Assembly (NCBI RefSeq): GCF_964194025.1
Contig: NC_134482.1
Span: 41,664,001 to 41,728,000, forward strand
Reading direction: 5' to 3'
Length of the DNA stretch: 64,000 nt
From: Convolutriloba macropyga
Taxonomy: Eukaryota
Shown here: positions 34,504 through 59,370 of the stretch, one piece after another
How positions within the stretch are numbered: position 1 is the first letter of the stretch
Layout of the letters: every line of letters begins with the position of its first letter
The notes under the pieces: model-generated
The model's input: the letters and a program-made list of their open reading frames with translations, nothing else
Told to the model about the DNA's origin: nothing
Database searches by the model: none
Program-made: the position numbers and the translations under genes

Positions 34504-34795
34504 CCCGGGTTGCCCATCATACAACTTTCCTTGATTTCATACAAGGTCATATATGATCCCCGGTAATCATACAAGGTCATATATGATTTGTATGATTTCC
34601 CGGTAATCATACAAGTTTCATACAAAAAACAAAAAAAGTGTTAAACCACTCTAATCGTAACAGCTATAACGCTCATTCGGTAAGAAATACACCAGGCTAA
34701 CCCAGCGATGAGTTTTTGAGATTCATTTTTCCCGGTAATCATACAAGGTCATATATGATTTGTATGATTTCCCGGTAATCATACAAGCTTCATAA
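34504..34795. repeat. Left TIR and subterminal repeats (CCCGGTAATCATACAAGGTCATATATGATT)
   Basis: Several copies at 34516-34625 and 34730-34795. Confidence 0.9.
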
Positions 34796-34904
34796 AAGAA
34801 AAAAATTTTAATTGTAAATGAGTTAACAACTCCAGTCGTAACAAGTATAACGCTCTTTTAGTAAAAAAAAACACACGAGAATCAACCAAACGATGAGTTT
34901 TTGA

Positions 34905-37900: not shown

Positions 37901-39350
37901 TAAGTTGTTGATATTGAATTATTCTCGACTGCTCTAGGTAGTTGTTTCACTACATCTGTCGGGGAAAAAGTTAAACATGTTCAAACTTGAAAAGATTGCT
38001 GAATTTTGACGTATTCGTGGACATCAATTTTCTGATACAACAAAACGGGCGAGTCGCAATGCGAGCCACTGCTCGATAGGGGAGGAGTTTAGTCGAAGGA
38101 AGCTCCTCATTGAGTGGAATTAAGCTTTTCCTATAAAAGTTTTTTTTATTTTTTGCGAATTCATGAAGTTCTTGTTTGAGTTCTTTTTTTTTATCAAAAC
38201 ACACAAAACACCCTGGCCTTTAGGGCGAGTTGGGAATTTTTGCCAGCTCCTAATAGAGGTTTTGGGTGATCAGTAGCTACGGAGTAGACCTGAATTTTGT
38301 TCAGAATTATCTACGTGGCGCGATTAGATGTTTTGCGCGATTTTGCGAGAAATCGGGCTCTCAAAAATCGGGGTACGCTTCATGTCACAAATGATTTCTC
38401 CAAAACTGCTGTAATAAATCGGACTGCAATGCTCGCGTTTTTTTGGTCTTAACCCCTTTTGCTGGCAGTGTTATTAGTTTCCCAAGTCGCCCTAATAAAA
38501 AAGTTGAAGGAAAGAATTTGTGAAACTATCACATTGAGAAAGGAATTTAATGTTTTGTACTTTTTCAAATTTCTCATTCAGTTTTTGACTAAAACGAGTG
38601 AGTATTGGCATTATATGTTGCTCTTAAGACGTGCTTCTCGGGAATGGCTTGTCACAGTCACTGGAAACGTTCTCTAGAACTGTTATTCACTAATGAATGC
38701 GGAAAAACAAATTTTTTCTCAAATTTTGTGGCTGAGTGGTGTTTTCCGCAAATGAATAGATTTTTGAGCGTGTGTTTTGTGTTTTCTAGACACCATTTAA
38801 GTTGTTGAAGCTAATGAAATCAAATAATGGGGTTAATACAACAATTTTTCTTTTTTCACGATTTCATCAAATTTCTGTGGATGTTGTTTTATGTCATAAC
38901 ACACAAAACATCATAACCTTCATGGTGAGGTGGGAAATTTTTTCCCACCTCACCATGAAGGTTTGCCGTGACCCAGAACGTCGAATTGGACAAGAATTAC
39001 ACCCACAAATACGCCGGGAACGCTGTTTCACGTTGTTTTACGTCGGTTCTGGAAATCATGGGCTTCGATTTTAGCCCAAAAAATGGGGTACAGAACAGTA
39101 GTCTGTTAATATCTGCTAAAGTACTGGACCAAATTAAACGGGAGTGGTCGCATTTTGTTAGCACTGAACCCCTCTTGCTTGCAGTACTTGGTTGGTTTCC
39201 CAAATCGGCCTAATCAAAAAGTTATTAATGTTCAAAATTGAAATAGTTCGAATTTTCGGGCTATCTTGCGTGACCCAAATTTTGTTACAACAAAACACGG
39301 GAGTTACCAAACAAATGTTAGTATTTTAGAATCCTCAGTTAGTGGGGAGT
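34905..39350. repeat. Tandem array, ~908-bp unit, about 3.6 conserved copies plus two degenerate partial copies, inside the transposon
   Basis: CCTTCATGGCGAGCT at 34945, 35858, 36762, 37670; degenerate versions at ~38217 and ~38917. Confidence 0.9.
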
Positions 39351-40014: not shown

Positions 40015-40817
40015 ATGTTCCCTTTCAGCAGTAAGTGTCACCCCAGCTGCACGGGTCGAGGCAGCGCCCAAATAGTCTGGTCGGCGACCGGACTGGGCTC
40101 CAAATTAGTAGGATAGGATTAGCATAATTTGTACTTCATGTTGCTTAAGAGAATACTAGGTTGCCTCTATTATAGTTGGATCGAGACAGCACTCTTAGAG
40201 TCAGGTCGGCGACCTGACAGGCCTGGAAGATAGTAGGCTAACAGTAAATAAAGTTTCTAGTTGCTTGTTAACACAAATGTTCAGTACTCACTATAACTTC
40301 AGTTGAAACGAATAACCTGCTACGTAACTTCAACGTTGGACTGATAGGCGATTCTCATCTGACTAGAATGGCTCCCTTCATGCAACCACAAGTTCGCATT
40401 ATTGGCAGAGGTGGCGAAAGAGCTAGTAACTATGCTAGATATTTGCAGGAAGTCAGACAGCTGGACATACTTCTTATTTTTATTGGAGGAAATGACATAA
40501 CTGGCAAGAACGGCTCTCCAGCGTCCTCTAAATTGAAGGACTTAGTACATGATATAAAGTCATTGTTCTCCTATGCAAGGTCGTACGGCATCATGGTGTT
40601 GACATGCGACATCATTCCTCGGGATGCCAACAAAATTGGCACAGACTTAACCAACAAAAGGCTGCTGAAAAGATTCAAGCGCAAGCATATTGTTCTGAGA
40701 GGTTGCTTCAACTTCCGAATGCTACGCGACACGGTGCACCTAGAAAATTATGACGAGTTATGGGAGCTCCTGGAGGCTAAAATTGTTCAGAGGTTGCATG
40801 ATGCGTATCGGTTTTGA
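40015..40817 (+). CDS. SGNH/GDSL hydrolase, ~176 aa; predicted exons 40015-40030 and 40303-40817
   Basis: VGLIGDSH (block I, upstream of the ORF-track start), GRGG (II), IFIGGNDI (III), DTVHL (V). ATG TTC CCT TTC AGC A|GTAAGT ... TTCAG|TT GAA gives an in-frame splice; fold call is strong, exon 1 is inferred. Confidence 0.8.
40056..40237 (+). other. Two homologous 57-nt hairpin modules in the predicted intron
   Basis: 40056-40112 and 40181-40237 align without gaps; stems GTCTGGTC-GGC-GACCGGAC and GTCAGGTC-GGC-GACCTGAC. Confidence 0.7.
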
Positions 40818-41309: not shown

Positions 41310-44300
41310 CAGTAACAAACTAATGAAGTGCTTGGAGGCAATAGGGCTGTTTTTTTCTTCCAAGGGTGGGTCAAAAGATGTGTTTCCCTCGCCAAAACGT
41401 TTCTTTCAGAAGGTCTTTGATTGTTTTAAATTGCTTCTTATCTGACAGCAATTCAGGTTTTTCGGGGCTTTCTGGTTGTGGTTTCTATCTACCAGACTAT
41501 TAAATACTGCTGTGCAGAAGAAACGGATCGGGTTTTGAAAATTTGGCTGAGAAATTCAGTTTTTCTTTGGAAATTGGCCTTTTTTTCTCTGAGATGTACA
41601 ATTTTGTCCTTTTTTAGACCAACCTGGGGTAACATATATTGGTTTCTGGTGGTTTTTGTGGTCATGAATCGTTTGTTATGTATATGGAAACGGGTGCATA
41701 CGAAATCTAAGCCAACAGGTACTTCATCTTGGTTTGCAACTTGTCTGAATGAGGTCGGCTTTTCACTTCAGTTATTGTTCGTTTTTGCCTAATTTCGCGT
41801 ACCACTTGATTTTTCACTGCTTTATGCCTCTTCGAACCCTGTGGGGAATCAATTATGCAAAGCTATGAACTGGTTGGAGGTAATAGGGCTGGTTTTTCTT
41901 GCAAGGGTGGGTCAAAAGATGTGTTTCTCTCGCCAAAACGTTTGTTTCAGAAGGTCTTTGAATGTTCTAAATTGCTTCAAATCTGATAGCAATTCAGGTT
42001 TTTCGGGGCTTTCTGGTTTTGGCTTCTCTCTACAAAACTGTTAAATACTGCTGTGCAGAAGAAACGGGTCAGGTTTTGTATTTTTGGCTGAGAAGTTTGT
42101 TTTTCTTTGGAAATTGGCCTTTTTTGTCTGAGAGGTACAATTTTGTCCTTTTTTAGGCCAACCTGTGGAAAGATATATTGGTTTCTGGTGGTTTTTCTGG
42201 ACGTGAATCGTTCGGTATGTATATGGAAACGGGTGCATTTGAAATTTGAGCCAACAGGTACTTCATCTTCTTGGTTTGCAACTTGTCTGAATGAGGTCAG
42301 CTTTTCACTTCAATTTTCGTTCGTTTTTTTGTTTAATTTCCCTTACCACTTGACTTTTCACTGCTTTATGTCTCTTCGAACCCTGTAGGGAATCAACTTT
42401 GCAAAGTTTTGAACTCGTTGGAGGTAATAGGGCTGGTTTTTCTTGCAAGGGTGGGTCAAAAGATGTGTTTCTCTCGCCAAAACGTTTCTTTCAGATGGTC
42501 TTTGAATGTTCTAAATTGCTTCAAATCTGATAGCAATTGAGATTTTTCGGGCTTTCTGGCTGTGGCTTCTCTCTACAATACTATTAAATACTGCTGTGCA
42601 GAAGAAACGGGTCAGGTTTTGTAAATTTGACTGAGAAGTTCTGTTTTTCTTTGGAAATTGGCCTTTTTTGTCTGAGAGGTACAATTTTGTCCTTTTTTAG
42701 GCCAACCTGTGGTAAGATATATTGGTTTCTGGTGGTTTTTCTGGACGTGAATCGTTCGGTATGTATATGGAAACGGGTGCATTCGAAATCTGAGCCAACA
42801 GGTACTTCATCTTCTTGGTTTGGAACTTGTCTGAATGAGGTCAGCTTTTCACTTCATATTGTGTTCGTTTTTTTGCCTAATTTCCCTTACTACTTGACTT
42901 TTCCTTGCTTTATGTCTCTTCAAACCCTGTAGGGAATCAACTATACAAAGTAATGAACTGGTTGGAGGTAATAGGGCTTGTTTTTTTTTGCAAGGTTGGG
43001 TCGAAAGATGTGTTTCTCTCGCCAAGACATTTCTTTCAGAAGGACTTCGATTGTTCTAAATTGCTTCAAATCTGATAGCAATTGAGGTTTTTCGGGGCTT
43101 TCTGGCTGTGGCTTCTCTCTACAATACTATTAAATACTGCTGTGCAGAAGAAACGGGTCAGGTTTTGTAAATTTGGCTGAGAAGTTCTGTTTTTCTTTGC
43201 AAATTGGCCTTTTTTGTCTGAGAGGTACAATTTTGTCCTTTTTTCGGCCAATCTGGGGCAACATATATTGGTTTCTGGTGGTTTTTCTGGACGTGAATCG
43301 TTCGGTATGTATATGGAAACGGGTGCATTCGAAATCTGAGCCAACAGGTACTTCATGTTCTTGGTTTGCAACTTGTCTGAATGAGGTCAGCTTTTCACTT
43401 CATATTGTGTTCGTTTTTTTGCCTAATTTCCCTTACTACTTGACTTTTCCTTGCTTTATGTCTCTTCAAACCCTGTAGGGAATCAACTATACAAAGTAAT
43501 GAACTGGTTGGAGGTAATAGGGCTTGTTTTTTTTTGCAAGGTTGGGTCGAAAGATGTGTTTCTCTCGCCAAGACATTTCTTTCAGAAGGACTTCGATTGT
43601 TCTAAATTGCTTCAAATCTGATAGCAATTGAGGTTTTTCGGGGCTTTCTGGCTGTGGCTTCTCTCTACAATACTATTAAATACTGCTGTGCAGAAGAAAC
43701 GGGTCAGGTTTTGTAAATTTGGCTGAGAAGTTCTGTTTTTCTTTGCAAATTGGCCTTTTTTGTCTGAGAGGTACAATTTTGTCCTTTTTTAGGCCAACCT
43801 GTGGTAAGATATATTGGTTTCAGGTGGTTTTTCTGGACGTGAACCGTTCGGTATGTATATGGAAACGGGTGCATTCGAAATCTGAGCCAACAGGTACTTC
43901 ATCTTCTTGGTTTGCAACTTGTCTGAATGAGGTCAGCTTTTCACTTCAATTTTTGTTCGTTTTTTTTGCCTAATTTCCCTTACTACTTGACTTTTCACTG
44001 CTTTATGTCTCTTCAAACCCTGTAGGGAATCAACTATGCAACGTAATGAACTGGTTGGAGGTAATAGGGCTTGTTTTTTTAGCAAGGTTGGGTCGAAAGA
44101 TGTGTTTCTCTCGCCAAAACATTTCTTTCAGAAGGACTTCGATTGTTTTAAATTGCTTCAAATCTGATAGCAATTGAGGTTTTTCGGGGCTTTTTAGTTG
44201 TTGCGTCTCTCTACAATACTAATAAATACTGCTGTGCAGAAGAAACGGGTCACGTTTTGTAAATTTGGCCGAGAAGTTCTGTTTTTCTTTGGAAATTGGC

Positions 44301-47300
44301 CTTTTTTGTCTGAGAGGTACAATTTTGTCCTTTTTTAGACCAACCTGTGGTAAGATATATTGGTTTCTGGTGGTTTTTCTGGACGTGAATCGTTCGGTAT
44401 GTATATGGAAACGGGTGCATTCGAAATCTGAGCTAACAGGTACTTCATCTTCTTGGTTTGCAACTTGTCTGAATGAGGTCAGCTTTTCACTTCAATTTTT
44501 GTTCGTTTTTTTGTCTAATTTCCCTTACCACTTGACTTTTCACTGCTTTATGTCTCTTCGAACCCTGTAGGGAATCAACTTTGCAAAGTTATGAACTCTT
44601 TGGAGGTAATAGGGCTGGTTTTTCTTGCAAGGGTGGGTCAAAAGATGTGTTTCTCTCGCCAAAACGTTTCTTTCAGAAGGTCTTTGAATGTTTTAAATTG
44701 CTTCAAATCTGATAGCAATTCAGGTTTTTCGGGGCTTTCTGGTTTTGGCTTCTCTCTACAAAACTTTTAAATACCGCTGTGCAGAAGAAACGGGTCAGGT
44801 TTTGAAAATTTGGCTGAGAAGTTCTGTTTTTCTTTGGGAATTGGCCTTTTTTTGTCTGAGAGGTACAATTTTGTCCTTTTTTCGGCCAATCTGGGGTAAC
44901 ATATAATGGTTTCTGGTGCTTTTTCTGGATGTGAATCGTTCGGTATGTATATGGAAACGGGTGCATTCGAAATCTGAGCTAACAGGTACATCATCTTCTT
45001 GGTTTGCAACTTGTCTGAATGAGGTCAGCTTTTCACTTCAATTTTTGTTCGTTTTTTTGTCTAATTTCCCTTACCACTTGACTTTTCACTGCTTTATGTC
45101 TTTTCGAACCCTGTAGGGAATCAACTTTGCAAAGTTATGAACTCGTTGGAGGTAATAGGGCTGGTTTTTCTTGCAAGGGTGGGTCAAAAGATGTGTTTCT
45201 CTCGCCAAAACGTTTCTTTCAGAAGGTCTTTGAATGTTCTAAATTGCTTCAAATCTGATAGCAATTCAGGTTTTTCGGGGCTTTCTGGTTTTGGCTTCTC
45301 TCTACAAAACTGTTAAATACCGCTGTGCAGAAGAAACGGGTCAGGTTTTGAAAATTTGGCTGAGAAGTTCTGTTTTTCTTTGGGAATTGGCCTTTTTTTG
45401 TCTGAGAAGTACAATTTTGTCCTTTTTTCGGCCAATCTGGGGTAACATATAATGGTTTCTGGTGCTTTTTCTGGATGTGAATCGTTCGGTATGTATATGG
45501 TAACGGTTGCATAGAAAATCTGAGCCAACAGGTACTTCATCTTCTAGGTTTGCAACTTGTCTGAATGAGGTCAGCTTTTCACTTCAATTTTTGTTCGGAT
45601 TTTTGTCTAATTTCCCTTACCACTTGACTTTTCACTGCTTTATGTCTCTTCGAACCCTGTAGGGAATCAACTTTGCAAAGTTATGAACTCGTTGGAGGTG
45701 ATAGGGCTGGTTTTTCTTGCAAGGGTGGGTCAAAAGATGTGTTTCTCTCGCCAAAACGTTTGTTTCAGAAGGTCTTTGAATGTTCTAAATTGCTTCAAAT
45801 CTGATAGCAATTCAGGTTTTTCGGGGCTTTCTGGTTTTGGCTTCTCTCTACAAAACTGTTAAATACCGCTGTGCAGAAGAAACGGGTCAGGTTTTGAAAA
45901 TTTGGCTGAGAAGTTCTGTTTTTCTTTGGGAATTGGCCTTTTTTTGTCTGAGAAGTACAATTTTGTCCTTTTTTCGGCCAATCTGGGGTAACATATAATG
46001 GTTTCTGGTGCTTTTTCTGGATGTGAATCGTTCGGTATGTATATGGTAACGGTTGCATAGAAAATCTGAGCCAACAGGTACTTCATCTTCTAGGTTTGCA
46101 ACTTGTCTGAATGAGGTCAGCTTTTCACCTCAATTTTTGTTCGGTTTTTTGTCTAATTTCCCTTACCACTTGACTTTTCACTGCTTTATGTCTCTTCGAA
46201 CCCTGTAGGGAATCAACTCTGCAAATTTATGAACTGGTTGGAGGTAATAGGGCTGGTTTTTCTTGCAAGGGTGGGTCAAAAGATGTGTTTCTCTCGCCAA
46301 AATGTTTCTTTCAGAAGGTCTTTGATTGTTTTAAATTGCTTCAAATCTGATAGCAATTCAGGTTTTTCGGGGCTTTCTGGTTTTGGCTTCTCTCTACAAA
46401 ACAGTTAAATACCGCTGTGCAGAAGAAACGGGTCAGGTTTTGAAAATTTGGCTGAGAAGTTCTGTTTTTCTTTGGGAATTGGCCTTTTTTTGTCTGAGAG
46501 GTACAATTTTGTCCTTTTTTCGGCCAATCTGGGGTAACATATAATGGTTTCTGGTGCTTTGTCTGGATGTGAATCGTTCGGTATGTATATGGAAACGGGT
46601 ATATACAAAATCTGAGCTAACAGGTACTTCATCTTCTTGGTTTGCAACTTGTCTGAATGAGGTCAGCTTTTCACTTCAATTTTCGTTCGTTTTTTTGTCT
46701 AATTTCCCTTACCAGTTGACTTTTCACTGCTTTATGTCTCTTCGAACCCTGTAGGGAATCAACTCTGCAAAGTTATGAACTGGCTGGAGGTAATAGGGCT
46801 GGTTTTTCTTGCAAGGGTGGGTCAAAAGATGTGTTTCTCTCGCCAAAACGTTTCTTTCAGAAGGTCTTTGAGTGTTTTAAATTGCTTCAAATCTGATAGC
46901 AATTCAGGTTTTTCGGGGCTTTCTGGTTTTGGCTTCTCTCTACAAAACTGTTAAATACCGCTGTGCAGAAAAAACGGGTCAGGTTTTGAAGATTTGGCTG
47001 AGAAGTTCTGTTTTTCTTTGGGAATTGGCCTTTTTTTGTCTGAGAGGTACAATTTTGTCCTTTTTTCGGCCAATCTGGGGCAACATATAATGGTTTCTGG
47101 TGCTTTTTCTGGATGTCAATCGTTCGGTATGTATATGGAAACGGGTGTATACGAAATCTGAGCTAAGAGGTACTTCATCTTCTTGGTTTGCAACTTGTCT
47201 GAATGAGGTCAGCTTTTCACTTCAATTTTCGTTCGTTTTTTTGTCTAATTTCCCTTACCACTTAATTTTTCACTGCTTTATGTCTCTTCGAACCCTGTAG

Positions 47301-50300
47301 GGAATCAACTTTGCAAAGTTTTGAACTCGTTGGAGGTAATAGGGCTGGTTTTTCTTGCAAGGGTGGGTCAAAAGATGTGTTTCTCTCGCCAAAACCTTTC
47401 TTTCAGAAGGTCTTTGAATGTTCTAAATTGCTTCAAATCTGATAGCAATTGAGATTTTTCGGGGCTTTCTGGCTGTGGCTTCTCTCTACAATACTATTAA
47501 ATGTTGCTGTGCAGAAGAAACGGGTCAGGTTTTGAAAATTTGGCTGAGAAGTTCTGTTTTTCTTTGGGAATTGGCCTTTTTTTGTCTGAGAGGTACAATT
47601 TTGTCCTTTTTTCGGCCAATCTGGGGCAACATATAATGGTTTCTGGTGCTTTTTCTGGATGTGAATCGTTCGGTAGGTATATGGAAACGGGTGTATACGA
47701 AATCTGAGCTAACAGGTACTTCATCTTCTTGGTTTGCAACTTGTCTGAATGAGGTCAGCTTTTCACTTCAATTTTCGTTCGTTTTTTTGTCTAATTTCCC
47801 TTACCACTTGACTTTTCACTGCTTTATGTCTCTTCGAACCCTGTAGGGAATCAACTTTGCAAAGTTTTGAACTCGTTGGAGGTAATAGGGCTGGTTTTTC
47901 TTGCAAGGGTGGGTCAAAAGATGTGTTTCTCTCGCCAAAACGTTTCTTTCAGAAGGTCTTTGAATGTTCTAAATTGCTTCAAATCTGATAGCAATTCAGG
48001 TTTTTTGGGGCTTTCTGGTTTTGGCTTCTCTCTACAAAACTGTTAAATACCGCTGTGCAGAAGAAACGGGTCAGGTTTTGAAAATTTGGCTGAGAAGTTC
48101 TATTTTTCTTTGGGAATTGGCCTTTTTTTGTCTGAGAGGTACAATTTTGTCCTTTTTTCGGCCAATCTGGGGCAACATTTAATGGTTTCTGGTGCTTTTT
48201 CTGGATGTGAATCGTTCGGTATGTATATGGAAACGGGTGTATACGAAATCTGAGCTAACAGGTACTTCATCTTCTTGGTTTGCAACTTGTCTGAATGAGG
48301 TCAGCTTTTCACTTCAATTTTCGTTCGTTTTTTTGTCTAATTTCCCTTACCACTTGACTTTTCACTGCTTTATGTCTCTTCGAACCCTGTAGGGAATCAA
48401 CTTTGCAAAGTTTTGAACTCGTTGGAGGTAATAGGGCTGGTTTTTCTTGCAAGGGTGGGTCAAAAGATGTGTTTCTCTCGCCAAAACGTTTCTTTCAGAA
48501 GGTCTTTGAATGTTCTAAATTGCTTCAAATCTGATAGCAATTCAGGTTTTTTGGGGCTTTCTGGTTTTGGCTTCTCTCTACAAAACTGTTAAATAACGCT
48601 GTGCAGAAGAAACGGGTCAGGTTTTGAAAATTTGGCTGAGAAGTTCTGTTTTTCTTTGGGAATTGGCCTTTTTTTGTCTGAGAGGTACAATTTTGTCCTT
48701 TTTTCGGCCAATCTGGGGCAACATATAATGGTTTCTGGTGCTTTTTCTGGATGTGAATCATTCGGTATGTATATGGAAACGGGTGTATACGAAATCTGAG
48801 CTAACAGGTACTTCATCTTCTTGGTTTGCAACTTGTCTGAATGAGGTCAGCTTTTCACTTCAATTTTCGTTCGTTTTTATGTCTAATTTCCCTTACCACT
48901 TGACTTTTCACTGCTTTATGTCTCTTCGAACCCTGTAGGGAATCAACTTTGCAAAGTTTTGAACTCGTTGGAGGTAATAGGGCTGGTTTTTCTTGCAAGG
49001 GTGGGTCAAAAGATGTGTTTCTCTCGCCAAAACGTTTCTTTCAGAAGGTCTTTGAATGTTCTAAATTGCTTCAAATCTGATAGCAATTCAGGTTTTTTGG
49101 GGCTTTCTGGTTTTGGCTTCTCTCTACAAAACTGTTAAATACCGCTGTGCAGAAGAAACGGGTCAGGTTTTGAAAATTTGGCTGAGAAGTTCTGTTTTTC
49201 TTTGGGAATTGGCCTTTTTTTGTCTGAGAGGTACAATTTTGTCCTTTTTTCGGCCAATCTGGGGCAACATATAATGGTTTCTGGTGCTTTTTCTGGATGT
49301 GAATCGTTCGGTATGTATATGGAAACGGGTGTATACGAAATCTGAGCTAACAGGTACTTCATCTTCTTGGTTTGCAACTTGTCTGAATGAGGTCAGCTTT
49401 TCACTTCAATTTTCGTTCGTTTTTTTGTCTAATTTCCCTTACCACTTGACTTTTCACTGCTTTATGTCTGTTCGAACCCCGTAGGGAATCAACTTTGCAA
49501 ATTTTTGAACTCGCTGGAGGTAATAGGGCTGGTTTTTCTTGCAAGGGTGGGTCAAAAGATGTGTTTCTCTCGCCAAAACGTTTCTTTCAGAAGGTCTTTG
49601 AATGTTCTAAATTGCTTCAAATCTGATAGCAATTCAGGTTTTTTGGGGCTTTCTGGTTTTGGCTTCTCTCTACAAAACTGTTAAATACCGCTGTGCAGAA
49701 GAAACGAGTCAAGTTTTGAAAATTTGGCTGAGAAGTTCTGTTTTTCTTTGGGAATTGGCCTTTTTTGTCTGAGAGGTACAATTTTGTCCTTTTTTCGGCC
49801 AATCTGGGGCAACATATAATGGTTTCTGGTGCTTTTTCTGGATGTGAATCGTTCGGTATGTATATGGAAACAGGTGTATACGAAATCTGAGCTAACAGGT
49901 ACTTCATCTTCTTGGTTTGCAACTTGTCTGAATGAGGTCAGCTTTTCACTTCAATTTTCGTTCGTTTTTTTGTCTAATTTCCTTACCACTTGACTTTTCA
50001 CTGCTTTATGTCTCTTCGAACCCTGTAGGTAATCAACTTTGCAAAGTTTTGAACTCGTTGGAGGTAATAGGGCTGGTTTTTCTTGCAAGGGTGGGTCAAA
50101 AGATGTGTTTCTCTCGCCAAAACCTTTCTTTCAGAAGGTCTTTGAATGTTCTAAATTGCTTCAAATCTGATAGCAATTCAGGTTTTTTGGGGCTTTCTGG
50201 TTTTGGCTTCTCTCTACAAAACTGTTAAATACCGCTGTGCAGAAGAAACGGGTTAGGTTTTGAAAATTTGGCTGAGAAGTTCTGTTTTTCTTTGGGAATT

Positions 50301-51197
50301 GGCCTTTTTTTGTCTGAGATGTACAATTTTGTCCTTTTTTCGGCCAATCTGGGGCAACATATAATGGTTTCTGGTGCTTTTTCTGGATGTGAATCGTTCG
50401 GTATGTATATGGAAACAGGTGTATACGAAATCTGAGCTAACAGGTACTTCATCTTCTTGGTTTGCAACTTGTCTGAATGAGGTCAGCTTTTCACTTCAAT
50501 TTTCGTTAGTTTTTTTGTCTAATTTCCCTTACCACTTGACTTTTCACTGCTTTATGTCTGCTCGAATTCTGTAGGGAATCAACTTTGCAAAGTTTTGAAC
50601 TCGTTGGAGGTAATAGGGCTGGTTTTTCTTGCAAGGGTGGGTCAAAAGATGTGTTTCTCTCGCCAAAACGTTTCTTTCAGAAGGTCTTTGAATGTTCTAA
50701 ATTGCTTCAAATCTGATAGCAATTCAGGTTTTTTGGCGCTTTCTGGTTTTGGCTTCTCTCTACAAAACTGTTAAATACCGCTGTGCAGAAGAAACGGGTC
50801 AGGTTTTGAAAATTTGGCTGAGAAGTTCTGTTTTTCTTTGGGAATTGGCCTTTTTTTGTCTGAGAAGTACAATTTTGTCCTTTTTTCGGCCAATCTGGGG
50901 TAACATATAATGGTTTCTGGTGCTTTTTCTGGATGTGAATCGTTCGGTATGTATATGGTAACGGTTGCATAGAAAATCTGAGCCAACAGGTACTTCATCT
51001 TCTAGGTTTGCAACTTGTCTGAATGAGGTCAGCTTTTCACTTCAATTTTTGTTCGGTTTTTTGTCTAATTTCCCTTACCACTTGATTTTTCACTGCTTTA
51101 TGTCTCTTCGAATCCTGTAGGGAATCAACTATGCAAAAGTATGAACTAGTTGGAGTTAATAGGGCTGGTTTTTTCTACGAGGGTGGGTCAAAAGATT
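41310..51197. repeat. Satellite array, ~546-bp unit x18, inside the transposon
   Basis: GAGGTAATAGGGCTGGTTTTTCTTGCAAGGGTGGGTCAAAAGATG recurs every 541-547 bp from ~41336 to ~51152; edge copies more diverged. Confidence 0.98.
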
Positions 51198-51456: not shown

Positions 51457-52539
51457 ATGGAAAGACCGGTAAGGACAACCAAGGGTCATTCGTCCCAAAA
51501 CTACGAGGAATTCGACCAGGACCTAATGCGCACCGCTCGAAATTTGTGGTGGATGTTTAGCAAAAAAGGTGACCTGAAGCCAATTGTAATACCTTACAGT
51601 AGCGTCATGTTTCCGACCACGATGACCATTCGGCAAAAAGTAAATCTTCAATATAAACCCCCAAAGTCGAAGGTTAATCTCTTCTACCAAGGAAAGACGA
51701 TCGAGTGCTCTCTCATTGGTGTGATCGGCAATGGTTTTGTAAATGATGCCATGAGACAGGCACACCAAAAGATGGCGGATGCTGGTGGTCAATTAAGTGA
51801 CGTAAGTATCCATGAGAGTCAGCCTTCGCCGGCTCCTAATCTGAAAAGACTGAGTCCGCAACCTGTTCCTTCTAAGGCAAAGAAGATGATCAAGTTCGTG
51901 CAGCCGGAGACTGAAGATCCTCGTGTGGAATTGGATGTTGACGACAATGAGACTTGCGAGACAGTGGACGAAAATGAAACCGCAGGCCCGGATAGCCTTG
52001 AAAATTTGTCGGACGACCTTGTCAATCTCTTTGATAAGAAATTCAGGCAACTCCTTGTTGTACATGAAGACAATGCAAGAAAACTTGCCCTCGAGAACAA
52101 CCGTTTTCGAGCTCGTTTCACTGATCTTCTGAGAAGGCAAAAGGGCGAGGAGACTGTTATGCTAGCGCCGAGTGATAACTCTGAGCCGCTAATTTTCAAC
52201 GGCTTCGATCTGATGACCCTAACGCCTGTTGGTGGAGCGTCAGCGTTCGGCAGACTCTTGGCAGCTACAATTTTTGGCGCAGAAAACAATTGCGATTTGA
52301 TTACTCATCGTTTGGATATAAAGGTAACTAAGAACAACTGCCGTAAAGCAGCTGATCCCGTCAAAGAAGCGCTGTTCAAGGAGTGTGTTGGGCGTTTTTT
52401 CTCAAAAGATGCTGCTAGGGCCCTACGTGACGCAATTCGTGGTGCGAACCAATATGGAACGGACATGAAAACAAAATATGCATCACTCTCAGAGATCAAC
52501 AAAAATGTTGAGCCGGATGATAATTCTGATGACGAATGA
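51457..52539 (+). CDS. Transposon accessory protein, 360 aa, coiled coil plus C-terminal BEN-like domain
   Basis: Intact long ORF; SAFGRLLAATIFG...RKAADPVK...AIRGANQY resembles the BEN pattern; clearly paralogous to 53403-54101. Confidence 0.7.
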   Translation: MERPVRTTKGHSSQNYEEFDQDLMRTARNLWWMFSKKGDLKPIVIPYSSVMFPTTMTIRQKVNLQYKPPKSKVNLFYQGKTIECSLIGVIGNGFVNDAMRQAHQKMADAGGQLSDVSIHESQPSPAPNLKRLSPQPVPSKAKKMIKFVQPETEDPRVELDVDDNETCETVDENETAGPDSLENLSDDLVNLFDKKFRQLLVVHEDNARKLALENNRFRARFTDLLRRQKGEETVMLAPSDNSEPLIFNGFDLMTLTPVGGASAFGRLLAATIFGAENNCDLITHRLDIKVTKNNCRKAADPVKEALFKECVGRFFSKDAARALRDAIRGANQYGTDMKTKYASLSEINKNVEPDDNSDDE

Positions 52540-53402
52540 AGATCTTGTATGGCCGACTGTGGCCTTGCGTTATTAGTTTTGCAACAACAATGTATTTTGC
52601 TTCCTCTTCATTAAATTTCAATCTGAAACTTTGCAATGCTATTGTGTTGATTTTTTCCACGATGAAAATAGACGTATGTTAGGCCGACTGTGGCCCAGGT
52701 TCAAACTGATATTTGTTAAACTATAAGTTTTTGCTACGCGCAGTTTGTTCTGTCCATATAGCCGCAAACTGACTGGTCAGTCTGTGTTCAAATTTTCCTT
52801 GTTTCCATGAGTTTGTTCTAAATTGAAACGTGCTGTTTTATTGCTTTTGGCTTTTCGGTTTCATATTCAGTTTGTTTGCTGTAAAATTGATAAAACGGGG
52901 AGATACAGGAAGACAATAATATTTTGTACTAATTTTAAATGCAGTTCGGGAATTGAGTTTATTTTGCAGTTTCTCAAGTTCTATTTTACGTTTTGTCTAT
53001 TGTTTAGTTTGAGTTGCATGTCTTCTGCTGCTTCTTTTTGAAAGCTTGTTTTAAACAGCTTTTAAGTTCATTCCCAGAAATTTGTCTAAACCAGATACTT
53101 TTCAGTTTGTTAAATAAAGTTTGCAAAACAACGCATTATTTTTTTGATTAACTGGAAGAATACAGCATGCTGGCAGAGTTTATCACATCGAGTGTTGTTG
53201 TTACAAAAGCACTTTTAACTCGAAACAGATAACGTTGCTTTACATAATTTGGAAATCAAGGGCGGAAAATATTGAGTAGATTTTAATCAATATTCTATTT
53301 TCACTAACGATAGATGTGTTGGTTGTACTCTAAATCCAAAACTCAATACTACATACGTTAGTTGTTTGATAACAATGTCAATTTCTTTTCAGAAACTTGA
53401 AA

Positions 53403-54101
53403 ATGCCACGAGTTGATAGAAAAAGGTTGCTTTCGAGCTCCGAATCTGAAAGTGATGGAGAAATCGCAGACTCTCAAGTTGATAATGTAGGCCCAGAATC
53501 GCAATGTCAAAGCAATGTTTATACTCAAGAAATTGATTCCACTCTTCCAACGCCGAGCAAAACTCTAGCCCCATTGACTAGCATGACTTCAACACCAAAG
53601 CGAACGGATAAATTGGTGCAATTAGAAGTTCGTCTTGATACGCTTATTGGGGCGCACAAAAACAGATTGAGACAGCTGCGACATGAGTTGAAAGCGGATA
53701 ATGCCGAATTTTTGAGTGTCGTTGAAGGTGAACTTTCTGGCGGACAAGTGGCATACTCCAATGAGAATGAAAAGGCTGTGATTCATAATGGTCGTAATCT
53801 TATGGACATTGTTGCGGGTAGTGACCCTTGTCGTTTTGGTCGTGATCTTGCGAAAGCTATTTTTGGCGAGGAGGAAGATTGCCTTCTACAAAATTACATG
53901 ATTGGCCAACAGCGCAGCAAGATGAACTCGCGACCACGTGTTGAACTTTCTTTGGAAAGACTTTTCACAACAGTCGTCCGACAAAAATATCCAAAGGTGC
54001 CCGATTACTGCCTCAGAGAAGCAAGAGCAGCCGCTAACCAGTTGGGTCTTGACTTCAAAAAGAAAGCGCTGAAAAGAAACGCTACAGAACCAGGTTGCTG
54101 A
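53403..54101 (+). CDS. Second transposon accessory protein, 232 aa, coiled coil plus BEN-like domain
   Basis: Intact ORF (first ATG 53403); NGRNLMD...CRFGRDLAKAIFGEEEDCLL...LREARAAANQLG aligns with NGFDLMT...SAFGRLLAATIFGAENNCDL...LRDAIRGANQYG. Confidence 0.7.
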   Translation: MPRVDRKRLLSSSESESDGEIADSQVDNVGPESQCQSNVYTQEIDSTLPTPSKTLAPLTSMTSTPKRTDKLVQLEVRLDTLIGAHKNRLRQLRHELKADNAEFLSVVEGELSGGQVAYSNENEKAVIHNGRNLMDIVAGSDPCRFGRDLAKAIFGEEEDCLLQNYMIGQQRSKMNSRPRVELSLERLFTTVVRQKYPKVPDYCLREARAAANQLGLDFKKKALKRNATEPGC

Positions 54102-55102: not shown

Positions 55103-55710
55103 ATGGAAGCTGCAACGAAAAGCAAGTCGATAATCTTTGCCCAGTGTGACGCTCAGATATCGAACACCCTTATAGAGAAGAAAAACAGACATGTTCAATC
55201 AATGGTAGACGAAGTTGATCCAGATGTTTTCCAGCGGCTGCTTATAACGGATACTAATTACAGCAAAGTTTTTCGACTTCTTTCGTCGTGTTATGACGAA
55301 GCTTTGAAGGCCGGTTATTTTTTTGAGCACGACTGCTTCGGGGGGTATGGTTTGTTCTATGGCCAAGAAGACAGTATCAAAATTACGAGGAAGCGCGATA
55401 TTTTATTGCCCGGCTTACATGCACTATTACAAACAGTTGACGATAAGGATTTGCCAAATTTCACACCCATTTCTATTTTTGCCGGTACTGATATTTGTAA
55501 AAAGAGCCGAATCATGGTTGGGCCTGTTCCTTTTGCAAATCACTCCTGCAAACCCAACACGGAGTATGTTGCTTCTTTTTTTAAACACAAAAATGCGTAA
55601 AGTTAAAAGCTATCAGAAACATCGAAAAAAATGAGGAACTGACGGTTTTCTACGGAGAAGATTTTTTCGGTATTAAAAACTGGGAATGCAGGTGTCCTCA
55701 TTTTGATATG
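55103..55710 (+). CDS. SET-domain lysine methyltransferase module, Suv4-20/KMT5B-C/Set9-like, split by a 1-nt frameshift near 55589-55593
   Basis: GGYGLF, IMVGPVPFANHSCKPNTEY, then in the transposase frame KCVKLKAIRNIEKNEELTVFYGEDFFGIKNWECRCPH, matching Suv4-20-type GPAAFINHDCRPN and EEI..YG..FFG..N..CxC motifs. Confidence 0.88.
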
Positions 55711-58066
55711 CATGGCGCTCCTCCAGTTGTTTTTAGCAACAAGCAGATGCAATTGATTTCTGCTAATCTTGAAAAGCGCTTTGTTAGGACCTTTAGAAGA
55801 AAAAATCGAGAAGATATAAAGAATAAGAGACGGAAAATGACGGAGATGCGTAATTTTGATGCTAGTGAGTCCAGTTGTTTGAGTAATAATTATGAAACTA
55901 CTTTTGAAAATGATGAGGCTACAATCGAAAATGAAGAAAATATAATCGAAAATGATGAATCTACACTTGCGGATGAATCTGGGGTCGGCACTGGTGTCGC
56001 AATTGATGATTTTAACGGTGCTCACAGCACACTGAGCGACCATCCGCCGTCACCAATTGCACATTTTCCCATTGTATTAGCTAGAGAAACGATTGATGAG
56101 CACCCAAGTGAAAGAAGATTGCCATCAAGTGATTTAGAGGACGATGAAAACTGTGCTGAAGCGAGAGGAAATAATTTAGTCACGGGTTTGAATCTAATTT
56201 TAGCGAAACACGGAACTGCCGATGAGGAGGCCAAAGACTGGATATCGTTCATGAAAACAGCTTTTCCTCACGCCCTAATTCCTAGTTTCAAAAGCCTCAA
56301 AAGACGTTTCCATCTAACGAAAGACAAGCATGAGGGTTTCCTCGTGACATGTCCCGATGGTCAATACTGGATACTGAACTTCATGTCAGAGATATATGAA
56401 ATAGTTAACTCAAACAAAGAAATTATAGCCAAGTATTCTTCCACGAGAGACGAAATGGCTGACCTTAAAGTGAAGTCGTGTTTTGATTCAGAACAAAAAA
56501 TAATGACAATCTCCTTGATTTTGAACTCCGATGGTGTTTGTTTTGTTAAGTCGAGTCGATTGCAACTGTGGCCATTTTGGTTAGCCATTGCCAATCTACC
56601 ACCAATAAAACGTTCTACATACAAAAATATTGTTCTTGCCGCACTTTTGCGTGGAACGACTAAACCTGATTGGGAAAAGTTGGTCAGCGATTTTTCAGAA
56701 AAACTTTCTCAGCAATTCACGATTGAGTACAATCAAGTCCAGTACAAGTTAGTTGTCAAAATTGTTTTAATAGTTGCCGATATCCCGGCCCGGGCGTCTA
56801 TGCTGAATATGCATCATCATAGGGCTAAGTATGGATGCACACTCTGTTTAACGGAAACTCAAGCTATAGGGAAGTCAAGATATTTTCTTATCAAAAAGTT
56901 CCAAATGAGAAGACCTGAGACTCACAGATCTCATTTGCAAGCTCTTGAAAACGGCAATCTAGCTCATTTCAAAGGTGTGAAAGGGAAAAGCCCTTTTATC
57001 AAAATTGTACCAAAACTGCCTTTGACAGCGCCATTCGATGTAATGCATCAGGTTTATCTCGGCGTGACTAAGGTTCTCCTTGAAGTTATAGAAAAGAAAA
57101 CACATAGAAATGATTTAATATGCCTGAACAATACAGTGGCAACGTTAGCTACTCCTGTAAAAATTAAAAGGTCTATTCGTCCACTGGATGATCTGAAATT
57201 TTTCAAAGCGAACGAGCTGAAAGTCTGGTTGCTGTATGTTGGCCCCGCACTTTTTGGTGAAACAATAAACGAAGTGAGAGCGCAGCGGTTCTGGCTGCTG
57301 AGCTATGGTATCCGACTCCTGTTGGCGTCTTCGAATTTTTGCAAAGAGGCCGAGAGACAGATTAATCAATTTTTGCGTGAGACCAAAGATGAGTACACAG
57401 AACAGGTTTTCTCCGCAAATATTCATTCGTTGTCACATTTGACTTGGCAAGTGCAGAACTTTGGGCCTCTATGGACAACGTCAAGCATGATGTTCGAATC
57501 TGCCAATTATCAACTATGCTCAAAGTTCACAGGCACAGTTGCCTGTGAACTTGCCCCTTCTAGTTGAGAGGTACCAAAGAAACAAAGAAGTTTTCCGATC
57601 AACAATTGTTGAAGATCAACTTGCTCCGTTTTGCCAAAAAATGAAAGCTGAAAAGTTGCGCAAAGATGTTTATATGCCATTTTTTCAAGTACCTGAGGAC
57701 TTGAGAAAAGTTGGGCGAGTTTTTTATCGAAGCAGGCATCTGGAATTTTTCTACTTTGAAGCTTTGCCTAACAAAAAGGATTGCTATATTTCGGCTCGTT
57801 GTGATGGCAACCTTCTCTGCGGTAAGATACGGGCCTTTTTCAGGGAACGAGACGAAGAATTTGTGGCAATAGAACTAATGAAGATTTTAAAATCTCATTC
57901 TTCCCCGATAGGTTCGTCCTGTGAAGTTTACTCTTATCACGTTGTTGAGGATTCTTCGGAGCGGCTATCCGTTAACGTTAAAGCTGTATGCGACAAGTTC
58001 TTTCACATGGCACTAGCAGACACAGTTTTTCTGATACCTCTCATAAAAATTTTCGATAATGATTGA
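55708..58066 (+). CDS. EnSpm/CACTA DDE transposase (Transposase_21/DUF4218-like), frameshifted near 57540
   Basis: LILNSDG, QLWPFWLAIANLPP, VADIPARASMLN, YGCTLC, PFDVMHQVYLGV, FKANELKVWLLY, NIHSLSHL..QVQNFGPLWTTSSMMFESAN; C-terminus continues in ORF 57539-58066. Confidence 0.93.
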
Positions 58067-58714
58067 AAAGCTAAAGCTGAAAAGTCAACCAATTGAGGCT
58101 TCAAAGAAAACGACAGTCCTCAAGTGATAAAAAGTCGAATCAAATATGAAGACTCACTAAACAGCTACAATTAAGTAAAGCTGACTGCGGCTTGGACAAG
58201 TACAAAACTGATTGACATTTTTTGCCTTTCTCAAACTTCCTCTTGCTTGATTTCCTCTTCTGCCTGAGAGATTCAAAAGCAAACTGTAATTAGTTTTCCT
58301 TGGATTGGACGTTAGGATCGTAATGTGGTTGCAAAACCGATTGTGGCTTTTAAATAGCTGAACATTATATATTGAAACTTCTGAATACCAGTACAGTTTG
58401 AAAAATACTTCTTGTAATTAAGTCAAATAACAGTGCATCCTTTATGAAACAATAATTGCTTGTTCATTGCTCTTGTTTTCAATTTCATTTAATTGTTGAA
58501 TTAATTGATTTACTTTTGAAGTCTTTTGTAAGAGACGAGCTGATCATTAAACAGGCTAAGATAACTTTTAACTTATTATGCTTTCGAGCTTTTCACATAG
58601 GGATCATATATGGCTTTGTTATTAGCTTACGAGTGTCCTGCAAGGTTTAGTGGTCATCATACCAAAGCAGTCATCGATTTCCAAGTAATCGAACAGGGAG
58701 TATTGAGAATCTCT

Positions 58715-59370
58715 GTTGGGATTACCAGGAAATAATATATATGATTTCCTGGTAATCGTACAAGGATCATATTTGATCCTTGTACGATTACTAGGAAATC
58801 ATGTATTTTTTTTCCTGGCAATCCTAGCAGAGACTATCAATAATCCTTGCACGATTACTAAGAAACCATATTGAGTTTTTCTGATTATCGTGAACTCATA
58901 TCTGATTTTCTGGCAATCGTACAAGGGTCATATATGGTCCTCGTATGGTTACAAGGAAATCTTATATGACTTCCTGGTAATCGTACAAGGATCATATAAG
59001 GTCCTTGTATGGTTACAAGGAAATCATGCATGATTTCCTGGTAATCATACAAGGATCATATATGATTTCCTGGTAATCATACAAGGATCATATATGATTT
59101 CCTGGTAATCATACAAGGATCATATATGATTTCCCTGATTTCATACAACTTTCATCAATCATTTATCGTGGTTTTTGAGTGCTCCTGAACATTTCTTCTG
59201 TTTTTTTTTCTTAAAAGTCACACTAGGATTTTGTATGATTTCCCTGATTTCATGCAAGGATCATGTATGATTTCTTAGGTTCCATACAAGGATCGTACTA
59301 GGAAATACGTTATGATTTGTATGACATCATATATGATCCTTGTAGGATTACCGGGAAAGGTCAACCCGGG
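58715..59370. repeat. Right subterminal repeat array (TTTCCTGGTAATCATACAAGGATCATATATGA, direct and inverted) and right TIR
   Basis: More than 10 copies in both orientations; same motif as the left end. Confidence 0.92.

What the first reader, a model, noticed from the sequence alone, without database searches (positions are those of the whole stretch)
55103..58066. Suv4-20-type SET histone methyltransferase fused to a CACTA/EnSpm transposase
Seen: the ORF track splits this region, but the C-terminal half of the SET domain (KCVKLKAIRNIEKNEELTVFYGEDFFGIKNWECRCPH, ~55591-55701) is already in the transposase reading frame with no stop before MHGAPP. Adding one A to the A5 run at 55589-55593 joins the N-terminal half (…FANHSCKPNTEY…HKKCVK), and removing 7 nt near 57540 restores the C-terminus. 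The result is a single ~985-aa protein: SET, acidic linker, DDE transposase. Established: these motifs match the Suv4-20/Set9 H4K20 methyltransferases; H4K20me3 marks repeat heterochromatin and H4K20me2 is read by 53BP1/Crb2 in break repair. The known SET-transposase fusion, SETMAR, is a domesticated mariner, not an intact TIR-bounded CMC element. Inference: the transposase may write a chromatin mark at its donor or target sites, to steer repair or control silencing. The last post-SET Cys position reads Phe (TTT, one change from TGT), so this copy may be decayed.
Basis: partly seen in the sequence, partly recalled or inferred. Interest (0 to 1): 0.92.

Follow-up and report, generated by a model that had tools for sequence, protein, structure and literature searches.

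The report
Transposase with built-in KMT5-like SET domain
This is a broken copy of a 25-kb jumping gene whose cutting enzyme naturally starts with a domain built like the enzymes that methylate histone H4. Intact sister copies and many old lineages keep the same joined design, but what the domain methylates is untested.

Summary
Window 55103-58066 is one gene in three frame pieces: SET N-half, then SET C-half + acidic linker + DDE transposase core, then a C-terminal tail.

Two sister copies in the same assembly carry it as an uninterrupted 986-codon ORF.
- The first lesion is a 1-nt loss in the A-run at 55583-55585, not at 55589-55593.
- The second is a 9-for-5-nt replacement at 57540-57548 (net +4).
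- The Phe at the "third post-SET Cys" is the normal state of this clade (C-x-C-x5-H), not decay.

The SET part is KMT5/Suv4-20-like by sequence profile and by predicted fold. It is as constrained as the transposase core across lineages whose silent sites are saturated.

The host element spans window 34504-59370 (24,867 bp). It has 9-bp TIRs (CCCGGGTTG), 2-bp target duplications in two copies, subterminal repeats, two internal tandem arrays and three further ORFs. It belongs to the CMC superfamily but is not a canonical CACTA element.

Transposon-encoded SET genes are known (HarbingerS, oomycete MuDR, red-algal Plavaka). I found no paper on a KMT5-like SET fused in frame to a CMC transposase. 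Enzymatic function is untested.

This scan has already reported the same family on other pieces of this genome.

The parts
34502..34503 (.). 5' copy of the 2-bp target-site duplication (CT); its partner is at 59371-59372
   Evidence: Flanks read directly. A second copy (L008 5' end, L002 3' end, same contig) has AA/AA.
34504..34512 (+). 5' terminal inverted repeat, CCCGGGTTG
   Evidence: It is the only occurrence in the window and is the exact reverse complement of 59362-59370. Homology with sister copies L007 and L008 starts exactly here.
34513..34810 (.). 5' subterminal repeats (about 32-nt motif shared with the 3' end)
34906..38145 (.). Internal tandem repeat, period about 905-912 bp, about 3.5 units
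   Evidence: Staggered megablast hits of L006, L007 and L008.
40368..40817 (+). 149-aa ORF, GDSL/SGNH-hydrolase-like, inside the element
   Evidence: Pfam Lipase_GDSL_2 E=5.3e-5 at 24.2 bits, below the 32.9-bit cutoff. The region is present in the sister copy L006.
41316..51196 (.). Internal tandem array, period about 545 bp, about 18 units
   Evidence: Staggered megablast hits of L002 and L003 against the window.
51457..52539 (+). Accessory ORF-A, 360 aa, no Pfam hit
   Evidence: Conserved and collinear in the lineage of locus L001, whose SET-transposase is 55% identical to the window's (tblastx 59-66% identity; Pfam).
53397..54101 (+). Accessory ORF-B, 234 aa. Its C-terminal part is paralogous to that of ORF-A. 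BEN-like as a lead only.
   Evidence: 58% identity to L001:7677-8372, E=2e-93. No Pfam hit. Atlas feature hit to a BEN/DUF4806 cluster at 0.87.
55103..55600 (+). Piece 1: N-terminal helical region and SET N-half. G81-Y82-G83 lie at 55343-55351 and N146-H147-S148-C149 at 55538-55549. R143P is at 55530.
55583..55585 (+). Lesion 1: AAA where intact sisters have AAAA (1-nt loss, frame 2 to frame 1)
   Evidence: Run contigs carry the extra A.
55591..57567 (+). Piece 2: SET C-half, basic and acidic linker, and CMC transposase core. In the SET C-half, Tyr184 lies at 55651-55653, Cys196 and Cys198 at 55687-55695, His204 at 55711-55713. In the core, D477 lies at 56530-56532, D560 at 56779-56781, C579 and C582 at 56836-56847, H775 and H779 at 57424-57438, E799 at 57496-57498.
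   Evidence: Coordinates follow from the indel-free alignment.
57540..57548 (+). Lesion 2: 9 nt replace the sisters' 5 nt (net +4, frame 1 to frame 2)
57539..58066 (+). Piece 3: C-terminal about 170 aa of the transposase, out of frame in this copy
   Evidence: Collinear with P0033 residues 816-986. The window ends ...KIFDND where sisters read ...KIFEHD.
58580..59361 (.). 3' subterminal repeats (32/64-nt units, both orientations)
   Evidence: Also conserved downstream of the gene in L001.
59362..59370 (+). 3' terminal inverted repeat, CAACCCGGG
   Evidence: The window, L002 and L003 all diverge immediately after it.

Best explanation
What it is (shown). Window 55103-58066 is a decayed copy of the transposase gene of a 24,867-bp cut-and-paste DNA transposon spanning window 34504-59370. 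The element belongs to the CMC superfamily.

In intact copies the gene is one 986-codon ORF with four parts:
- an N-terminal KMT5/Suv4-20-like module (helical N-domain, SET core, variant post-SET C-x-C-x5-H);
- a basic stretch followed by an acidic low-complexity linker;
- a DDE core (D477, D560, E799) with the CMC-type C(2)C and H(3)H motifs;
- a conserved C-terminal domain.

The fusion is ancestral to many deeply diverged lineages. The SET part is under purifying selection as strong as that on the transposase core.

How it most likely works (inferred). The SET module is an active SAM-dependent lysine methyltransferase carried by the transposase to nucleosomes at the element's ends or at excision and integration sites. 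There it would methylate an H4K20-type substrate in cis. That could bias break repair or local chromatin state in the element's favour.

My odds:
- identity and architecture: about 0.95;
- retained catalysis: about 0.6;
- substrate is H4K20: about 0.4.
For: Architecture:
- Intact sisters P0033 and P0034 are 986 aa.
- Other intact lineages in the same genome are 955-1108 aa: P0002, P0049/50, P0067/69 and P0189.
- The same fusion occurs in other data sets: P0102 in NCBI GCA_013332895.1, and P0089 in three SRA runs.

KMT5 likeness:
- phmmer of P0002:1-215 against PDB gives SUV420H2 at 3.6e-14 and KMT5B at 6e-12. The next family, KMT2D, scores 7e-4.
- A profile of 11 transposon SETs scores SUV420H2 at 73.6 bits against 38.9 bits for NSD.
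- The AF2 model has pLDDT 79.5 and pTM 0.79.
- The top 15 Foldseek PDB hits are all SUV4-20H1/H2, with E about 3e-10 and TMq 0.54-0.67. Many of these alignments span 227-252 columns, so they include the N-terminal helices. MLL-type SETs reach TMq of only about 0.4.

Constraint:
- Between the window lineage and the P0002 lineage, pS is 0.92 (saturated).
- pN is 0.234 in SET, 0.239 in the transposase core and 0.465 in the linker.
- Across 20 lineages at 21-61% identity, N146, C149, N152, Y184, F189, C196 and C198 are invariant. G81, R143, F144 and E179 are nearly invariant.

Mobility:
- The 9-bp TIRs are exact, and homology with sister copies starts and stops exactly at the termini.
- 2-bp target duplications are seen in two copies.
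- Copies are 96.9-98.6% identical.

CMC motifs: D, D, C(2)C, H(3)H and E are conserved in 13 aligned proteins. They fit the published CMC/CMCT signature (PMC12730594).
Against: - There are no activity, substrate or expression data. The runs that hold the sequence are of unknown library type.
- The canonical KMT5 post-SET C-x-C-x2-C is replaced in this clade, and the post-SET region is modelled at low confidence (pLDDT below 50 from residue 186).
- Four distant lineages have NS(D/S)C in place of NHSC.
- Sequence similarity to KMT5 is strong only in the C-terminal half of the SET domain. No phylogeny with KMT5 orthologues was built.
- Repbase and Dfam could not be searched, so the family may already be catalogued there.
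Confidence: 0.55

Rival explanations
1. The SET module works mainly as a non-catalytic nucleosome or H4-tail binding tether. It would dock the transposase on chromatin for target choice or donor-end recognition, much as chromodomains steer chromovirus integrases. Methyl transfer would be dispensable.
For: The whole KMT5-like fold, including the N-terminal helical domain, is kept. The post-SET zinc site is remodelled and several lineages lose the His of NHSC. One of the matched PDB entries is titled 'Catalytic and non-catalytic mechanisms of ... SUV420H1' (8t9f).
Against: The residues that matter for SAM binding and catalysis in SET enzymes are the ones that stay invariant over saturated divergence: the GxG-type motif, Asn of NHxC and the Tyr of the FYG motif. 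A pure binding module would not need them.
Confidence: 0.25
2. The SET domain methylates a non-histone substrate, such as the transposase itself, one of the element's accessory proteins, or a host repair or silencing factor.
For: The variant post-SET site and only 16-21% structure-based identity to KMT5 leave room for a changed substrate. The element encodes two conserved accessory proteins of unknown role.
Against: The nearest relatives by sequence and fold are dedicated H4K20 enzymes, and KMT5-specific motifs are kept (ISIF..T and FYGxxFFGxxNxxCxC). No positive evidence points to another substrate.
Confidence: 0.12
3. The fusion is not a transposon feature. It would be a host SET gene lying next to, or domesticated with, a transposase as in SETMAR, or an assembly or annotation artefact. 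Alternatively, the frameshifts in the window are programmed.
For: In this window the gene is split into three frames. Gene calls in the database are automatic.
Against: - At least 33 ORF fragments or copies at 90% identity or more exist, including two uninterrupted 986-aa ORFs on different contigs.
- The same architecture recurs in many diverged lineages and in at least two other data sets.
- The gene lies inside a TIR- and TSD-bounded element, with collinear accessory ORFs also present in a lineage whose SET-transposase is only 55% identical to the window's.
- Sister copies lack both frameshifts.
Confidence: 0.03

Closest known systems
KMT5B/KMT5C (SUV4-20H1/H2) histone H4K20 methyltransferases
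   Same: - Best sequence and fold matches.
- N-terminal helical domain plus SET core.
- Shared motifs: RF(A/I)NH(S/D)CxPN, and (E/D)(I/L)TxFYGxxFFGxxNxxCxC.
- Invariant catalytic-type Tyr.
   Different: - Only 16-21% structure-based identity.
- The post-SET third Cys is absent in this clade, which has C-x-C-x5-H instead.
- The domain is fused to a transposase and encoded by a mobile element.
- Substrate is untested.
SETMAR (Metnase): primate SET gene fused to an Hsmar1 mariner transposase
   Same: One polypeptide with an N-terminal SET domain and a C-terminal DDE/D transposase domain.
   Different: SETMAR is a single-copy domesticated host gene without mobility (PMC9062482 abstract). It involves a different transposase superfamily (mariner against CMC). 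From background knowledge, not tested here, its SET class also differs. Here the fusion is the working transposase of a multi-copy element bounded by TIRs and target duplications.
DNA transposons carrying SET methyltransferase genes: HarbingerS and Phytophthora MuDR (Kojima & Jurka 2014, Repbase Reports, cited in PMC12730594), red-algal Plavaka PAG2 (bioRxiv 10.1101/2025.02.11.637652), Helitron captures
   Same: Autonomous DNA transposons that encode a SET domain. Plavaka is CMC-related and giant, with several accessory genes.
   Different: - In the sources I could read, those SETs are described as accessory genes. PAG2 combines a DNA N6-adenine methylase with SET.
- Here the SET is in frame with the transposase, is KMT5-like, and sits in a genome that also carries a BEL/Pao element.
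- I could not read the Repbase Reports, so HarbingerS gene structure is unverified.
CMC superfamily (CACTA/EnSpm, Mirage, Chapaev) transposases
   Same: Pfam Transposase_21 and DUF1258 hits. D, D, C(2)C, H(3)H, E motif order. Short (2-bp) target duplication. Subterminal repeats.
   Different: - Termini are CCCGGG..., not CACTA or CAC...GTG.
- The 2-bp duplication excludes canonical CACTA (3 bp) and Chapaev (3-4 bp, PMC4079192).
- From memory, Mirage makes 2-bp duplications and DUF1258 is its C. elegans family. That assignment is a lead and was not tested.

Membership tests
SET-domain lysine methyltransferases (Pfam PF00856) | Profile match above the curated cutoff | tested here: met
   Intact relatives: P0002 scores 39.3 bits against a 22.4-bit cutoff; P0089, P0102 and others score 30.9-44.7 bits. 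The window copy's two halves score 16.3 and 14.2 bits separately because the frameshift splits the domain.
SET-domain lysine methyltransferases (Pfam PF00856) | SAM-binding and catalytic motifs: GxG-type motif, NHxC, and the Tyr of the C-terminal SET motif | tested here: met
   GYG at 81-83, NHSC at 146-149 and Y184 are invariant in 11 sequences. N146, C149 and Y184 are invariant in 20 lineages, and His147 is Ser in 4 distant lineages. The window copy keeps these residues but has R143P.
KMT5/Suv4-20 subfamily | Closest to KMT5B/C rather than to other SET classes, by sequence | tested here: met
   SUV420H2 scores 1.7e-19 at 73.6 bits. The next class, NSD, scores 7e-9 at 38.9 bits.
KMT5/Suv4-20 subfamily | KMT5 fold: N-terminal helical domain packed on the SET core | tested here: met
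   The AF2 model has helices at 8-23, 40-49 and 51-69 ahead of the SET strands. The top 15 Foldseek hits are all SUV4-20H1/H2, and many align over 227-252 columns with TMq up to 0.67.
KMT5/Suv4-20 subfamily | Post-SET zinc motif C-x-C-x2-C | tested here: not met
   This clade has C-x-C-x5-H (the third position is F, S, K, I or D). Distant lineages P0189, P0132, P0227 and P0143 keep C-x-C-x2-C.
KMT5/Suv4-20 subfamily | H4K20me1/me2-directed methyltransferase activity | not testable with these tools
   Needs a biochemical assay.
KMT5/Suv4-20 subfamily | Phylogenetic placement within or sister to KMT5 orthologues | not tested
   No vetted KMT5 reference sequences were available as tool objects. 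Only score ranking was used.
CMC superfamily DDE transposases | Profile match to Transposase_21 / DUF1258 | tested here: met
   Window piece 2: DUF1258 at 41.3 bits (cutoff 33.1) and Transposase_21 at 30.8 bits (cutoff 28.6).
CMC superfamily DDE transposases | [quoted passage not shown] | tested here: met
   D477, D560, C579-x2-C582, H775-x3-H779 and E799 (FESxN) are conserved in 13 aligned proteins, including a SET-less thrips relative. The assignment of the catalytic residues is by motif order, not by structure.
CMC superfamily DDE transposases | TIRs with a 2-5-bp target duplication | tested here: met
   9-bp perfect TIR. Duplications are CT/CT in the window and AA/AA in the L008/L002 copy.
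CMC superfamily DDE transposases | 5'-CA..TG-3' termini ('in most cases') | tested here: not met
   Termini are 5'-CCCGGGTTG...CAACCCGGG-3'.
Canonical CACTA/EnSpm | CACTA (CAC..GTG) termini and 3-bp target duplication | tested here: not met
   CCC...GGG termini and a 2-bp duplication. 3-bp flanks do not match in either copy.
Chapaev | CAC...GTG termini and 3-4-bp target duplication (PMC4079192) | tested here: not met
   Same data as above.
SETMAR-type domesticated fusion | Single-copy host gene without functional transposon ends | tested here: not met
   Multi-copy: 33 cluster members at 90% identity or more, plus several diverged lineages. The gene lies inside a TIR- and TSD-bounded element.

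The most novel reading that the evidence does not exclude
An autonomous DNA transposon family whose transposase is itself a chromatin writer. The KMT5-like module would deposit H4K20-type methylation on nucleosomes at its own excision or integration sites. That could steer double-strand-break repair or set the element's chromatin state. It would be a natural, mobile counterpart of SETMAR, and a second, independent case of selection for joining a SET domain to a transposase.
Probability: 0.3. Interest if true: 0.85.

Novelty: new variant of a known kind. Interest (0 to 1): 0.66.

Why it matters
Transposons that carry their own chromatin or DNA-modifying enzymes are rare. Known cases include TET/JBP in fungal elements, VANDAL anti-silencers and SET genes in HarbingerS and Plavaka. 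They show how mobile DNA manipulates host epigenetic control.

Here the writer-like domain is physically part of the transposase. It is KMT5-like, old, and still present in near-identical intact copies.

That makes a long-standing idea testable in a natural system: that a SET domain joined to a transposase, as in SETMAR, links transposition chemistry to histone methylation and break repair. The protein is also a compact natural 'DNA-targeted SET' scaffold.

If the domain proves catalytically dead, the case would instead be a clean example of a histone-tail or nucleosome tether on a cut-and-paste transposase.

Tried and rejected
- **Inverted repeats close to the gene (blastn of 48-51.6 kb against 58-61.5 kb).** Only the 3' satellite-like subterminal repeats appeared. 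The true 5' end is 20 kb upstream.
- **Exact look-up of the GDSL-like ORF to reach sister 5' ends.** Nothing was on record. Two hops through small ORFs of the sister contig worked instead.
- **Read laying to verify the homopolymer loss and to find RNA.**
  - Only Logan contigs of runs of unknown type were available.
  - They carry the majority intact-frame alleles and no joints.
  - They can neither confirm the window-specific 1-nt loss nor prove transcription.
- **My first guess that the catalytic Glu lies in the invariant KANE motif.** I dropped it once the wider alignment showed H(3)H followed 20 residues later by FESxN.
- **Profile of the full-length family against PDB.** It gave only SET hits among the 60 matches listed (of 90 found), so no residue-level match to a solved transposase such as RAG1 or Transib was obtained.
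- **Programmed frameshifting, and a separately terminated SET gene.** Both were rejected because sister copies have one open frame.
- **Relation between the element's GDSL-like ORF and the 'SGNH-like' ORF of the neighbouring BEL/Pao element.** No similarity was found.
- **Literature searches.**
  - No paper describes this fusion.
  - No paper names the assemblies ERZ25071359 or GCA_013332895.1.
  - The organism remains unidentified.
Full report
**1. The observation**

ORF listing and direct reading show three pieces on the + strand:
- 55103-55600, frame 2;
- 55708-57567, frame 1, with the frame open back to 55591;
- 57539-58066, frame 2.

Pfam places SET-profile positions 50-79 at the end of piece 1, and positions 85-105 at the very start of the frame-1 stretch. 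DUF1258 (41.3 bits) and Transposase_21 (30.8 bits) follow, both above their cutoffs.

**2. Intact copies exist**

A protein search with the frame-1 piece found full-length proteins carrying SET plus DUF1258/Transposase_21. Examples are P0002 (955 aa, 55% identity) and P0004/5/7/9/11.

The window's own 90%-identity cluster has 33 members. Two of them are 986 aa (P0033, P0034). They sit on two different contigs of ENA assembly ERZ25071359 (loci L002 and L003).

The DNA of these loci matches the window at 98.6% and 96.9% over 8-14 kb.

A three-way alignment of the gene shows exactly two frame-breaking differences in the window:
- one A is missing from an A4 run (window AAA at 55583-55585);
- nine bases at 57540-57548 replace five in the sisters (net +4).

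The window also differs from its sisters at 28-30 nonsynonymous and 6-8 synonymous sites, including R143P at a nearly invariant SET residue. That pattern is neutral decay. Sisters L002 and L003 differ from each other by 14 nonsynonymous and 6 synonymous sites, as expected for transposon copies drifting after insertion.

**3. Reads**

Four runs of 'organism A' hold 72-76% of the sampled words. A run of 'organism B' holds 12%. An older run of organism A holds 10%.

Their Logan contigs carry the sister-type alleles at both lesions. One 723-nt contig spans the SET junction in the intact frame, and no joints were seen.

The library types are unknown and contigs drop rare variants. This therefore neither verifies the window's 1-nt loss nor proves transcription.

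P0089, a 1034-aa fusion from another data set, occurs identically in three SRA runs on 3.3-3.7-kb contigs with short flanks. That looks transcript-like but is unverified.

**4. What kind of SET**

- phmmer of P0002:1-215 against PDB gives SUV420H2 at 3.6e-14 and KMT5B at 6e-12. The next class scores 7e-4.
- A profile of 11 transposon SETs gives SUV420H2 73.6 bits against 38.9 bits for NSD. The alignment covers the KMT5-typical ISIF..T and FYGxxFFGxxNxxCxC motifs.
- An AF2 model of P0033:1-215 (pLDDT 79.5, pTM 0.79) has three N-terminal helices before the SET strands.
- Its top 15 Foldseek PDB hits are all SUV4-20H1/H2, with TMq up to 0.67. Many of these alignments span 227-252 columns. MLL-type SETs reach only about 0.4.

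The third post-SET Cys is absent in every member of this clade, intact copies included, and a His five residues further on is conserved.

I call the module KMT5-like, not a KMT5 orthologue. One defining feature is not met, and neither activity nor phylogeny was tested.

**5. Selection**

Between the window lineage (L002) and the P0002 lineage (L001), synonymous sites are saturated (pS 0.78-0.92).

| Region | pN |
|---|---|
| SET | 0.234 |
| Transposase core | 0.239 |
| Linker | 0.465 |
| C-terminal domain | 0.357 |

Across 20 lineages down to 21% identity, the Asn and Cys of NHSC, the Tyr of FYG and the two post-SET Cys are invariant.

A search of 1.84 billion representatives with the SET part gave 1180 hits. 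Among the long ones scanned, P0089, P0102, P0106, P0117, P0132 and P0189 combine an N-terminal SET with DUF1258/Transposase_21. They come from Logan, NCBI and ENA records.

The nearest SET-less relative found is a thrips protein at 26% identity. The fusion is therefore old and maintained.

**6. The element**

L001, whose SET-transposase is 55% identical to the window's, is collinear with the window over several features:
- an upstream 360-375-aa ORF;
- a 232-234-aa ORF (58% identity, E=2e-93);
- the SET-transposase gene;
- a downstream block of about 32-nt repeats.

The 3' end is defined by the window, L002 and L003 all diverging right after ...CAACCCGGG at 59370.

The only CCCGGGTTG in the window is at 34504, next to related subterminal repeats. 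Two hops along the sister contig (L006, then L007 and L008) show that 35002-41316 belongs to the same element, and that homology begins exactly at 34504.

Flanking dinucleotides are CT/CT in the window and AA/AA in the L008/L002 copy. The 3-bp flanks do not match. The target duplication is therefore 2 bp.

The element is 24,867 bp. It contains:
- a tandem repeat of about 905-bp period (34906-38145);
- a GDSL-like ORF (40368-40817);
- an 18-unit array of about 545-bp period (41316-51196);
- the two accessory ORFs;
- the SET-transposase gene.

**7. Transposase class**

An alignment of 13 proteins shows D477, D560, C579-x2-C582, H775-x3-H779 and E799 (FESxN). This is the C(2)C and H(3-4)H signature described for CMC/CMCT (PMC12730594).

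The termini (CCC...GGG) and the 2-bp duplication exclude canonical CACTA and Chapaev, which has CAC...GTG termini and a 3-4-bp duplication (PMC4079192). A Mirage affinity (DUF1258, 2-bp duplication) rests on my memory and is only a lead.

In the window copy all these catalytic residues are still encoded in piece 2. The second lesion lies 14 codons after E799 and puts the last 170 residues or so out of frame.

**8. Prior knowledge**

The searchable literature describes SET genes in HarbingerS and Phytophthora MuDR elements (Kojima & Jurka 2014, cited in PMC12730594). It also describes SET captures by Helitrons and the Plavaka accessory gene PAG2, which joins a DNA methylase to SET (bioRxiv 10.1101/2025.02.11.637652).

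I found no paper on a KMT5-like SET fused in frame to a CMC transposase. Repbase and Dfam could not be searched.

Earlier notes of this scan report the same fusion on at least seven other pieces of this genome. They include a '24-kb' element and signs of selection. My independent tests agree with them.

**9. Verdict**

The window copy is dead, but the family it belongs to is a genuine, recently active transposon whose transposase carries a KMT5-like SET module under selection.

Mechanism is inferred. I favour an active methyltransferase acting in cis on nucleosomes (about 0.6 for catalysis, about 0.4 for H4K20). A non-catalytic chromatin tether is the main rival.

In novelty terms this is a new variant of a known kind.

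Noticed in passing
window 41316-51196: About 18 tandem units of about 545 bp inside the transposon. They are shared, with different copy registers, by sister copies L002, L003 and L006. Units carry short ORFs of 80-130 aa that the database called as genes.
   Followed up: partly
window 34906-38145: A second internal tandem repeat with a period of about 905-912 bp, near the 5' end of the element. It is also present in L006, L007 and L008.
   Followed up: partly
window 40368-40817: A GDSL/SGNH-hydrolase-like 149-aa ORF inside the element (Pfam E=5e-5, below cutoff).
   Followed up: partly
window 51457-52539 and 53397-54101: Two accessory ORFs conserved between transposon lineages whose SET-transposases are only 55% identical. 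Their C-terminal parts are paralogous (tblastx about 33%) and look BEN-like. That rests only on an Atlas feature hit of 0.87; Pfam found nothing.
   Followed up: partly
L006 4643-5894 (sister copy), against window 39667/39668: A 1.25-kb insertion in the sister copy relative to the window copy. Part of it resembles window 39326-39592 at 81%.
   Followed up: no
proteins P0016-P0021 (other lineages): Five diverged SET-transposase ORFs all stop at the same alignment position, just after the conserved KPxW..(F)(E/K/Q)V. This suggests that those lineages have an intron there, while the window's clade is intronless.
   Followed up: no
window 9071-10126 vs L001 16396-17373 and 20587-21266: Another repeat family shared at 78-90% identity between the window and the flank of a different transposon copy.
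   Followed up: no
P0089 in SRR14219478, SRR14219490, SRR14219491: An identical 1034-aa SET-transposase ORF sits on 3.3-3.7-kb contigs with short flanks in three runs of one study. The pattern is transcript-like, but the library type was not available.
   Followed up: partly
window 55888-55965: A 21-nt tandem repeat (3.7 copies) encodes the acidic ENDE-rich part of the linker. The linker is the least constrained part of the protein.
   Followed up: partly
L005 (same genome), 10001-13327: A very divergent 1108-aa SET-transposase lineage (26-28% SET identity) coexists in the same genome. It keeps the canonical C-x-C-x2-C post-SET motif. Upstream lies a run of 15 minus-strand ORFs of unknown nature.
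   Followed up: no
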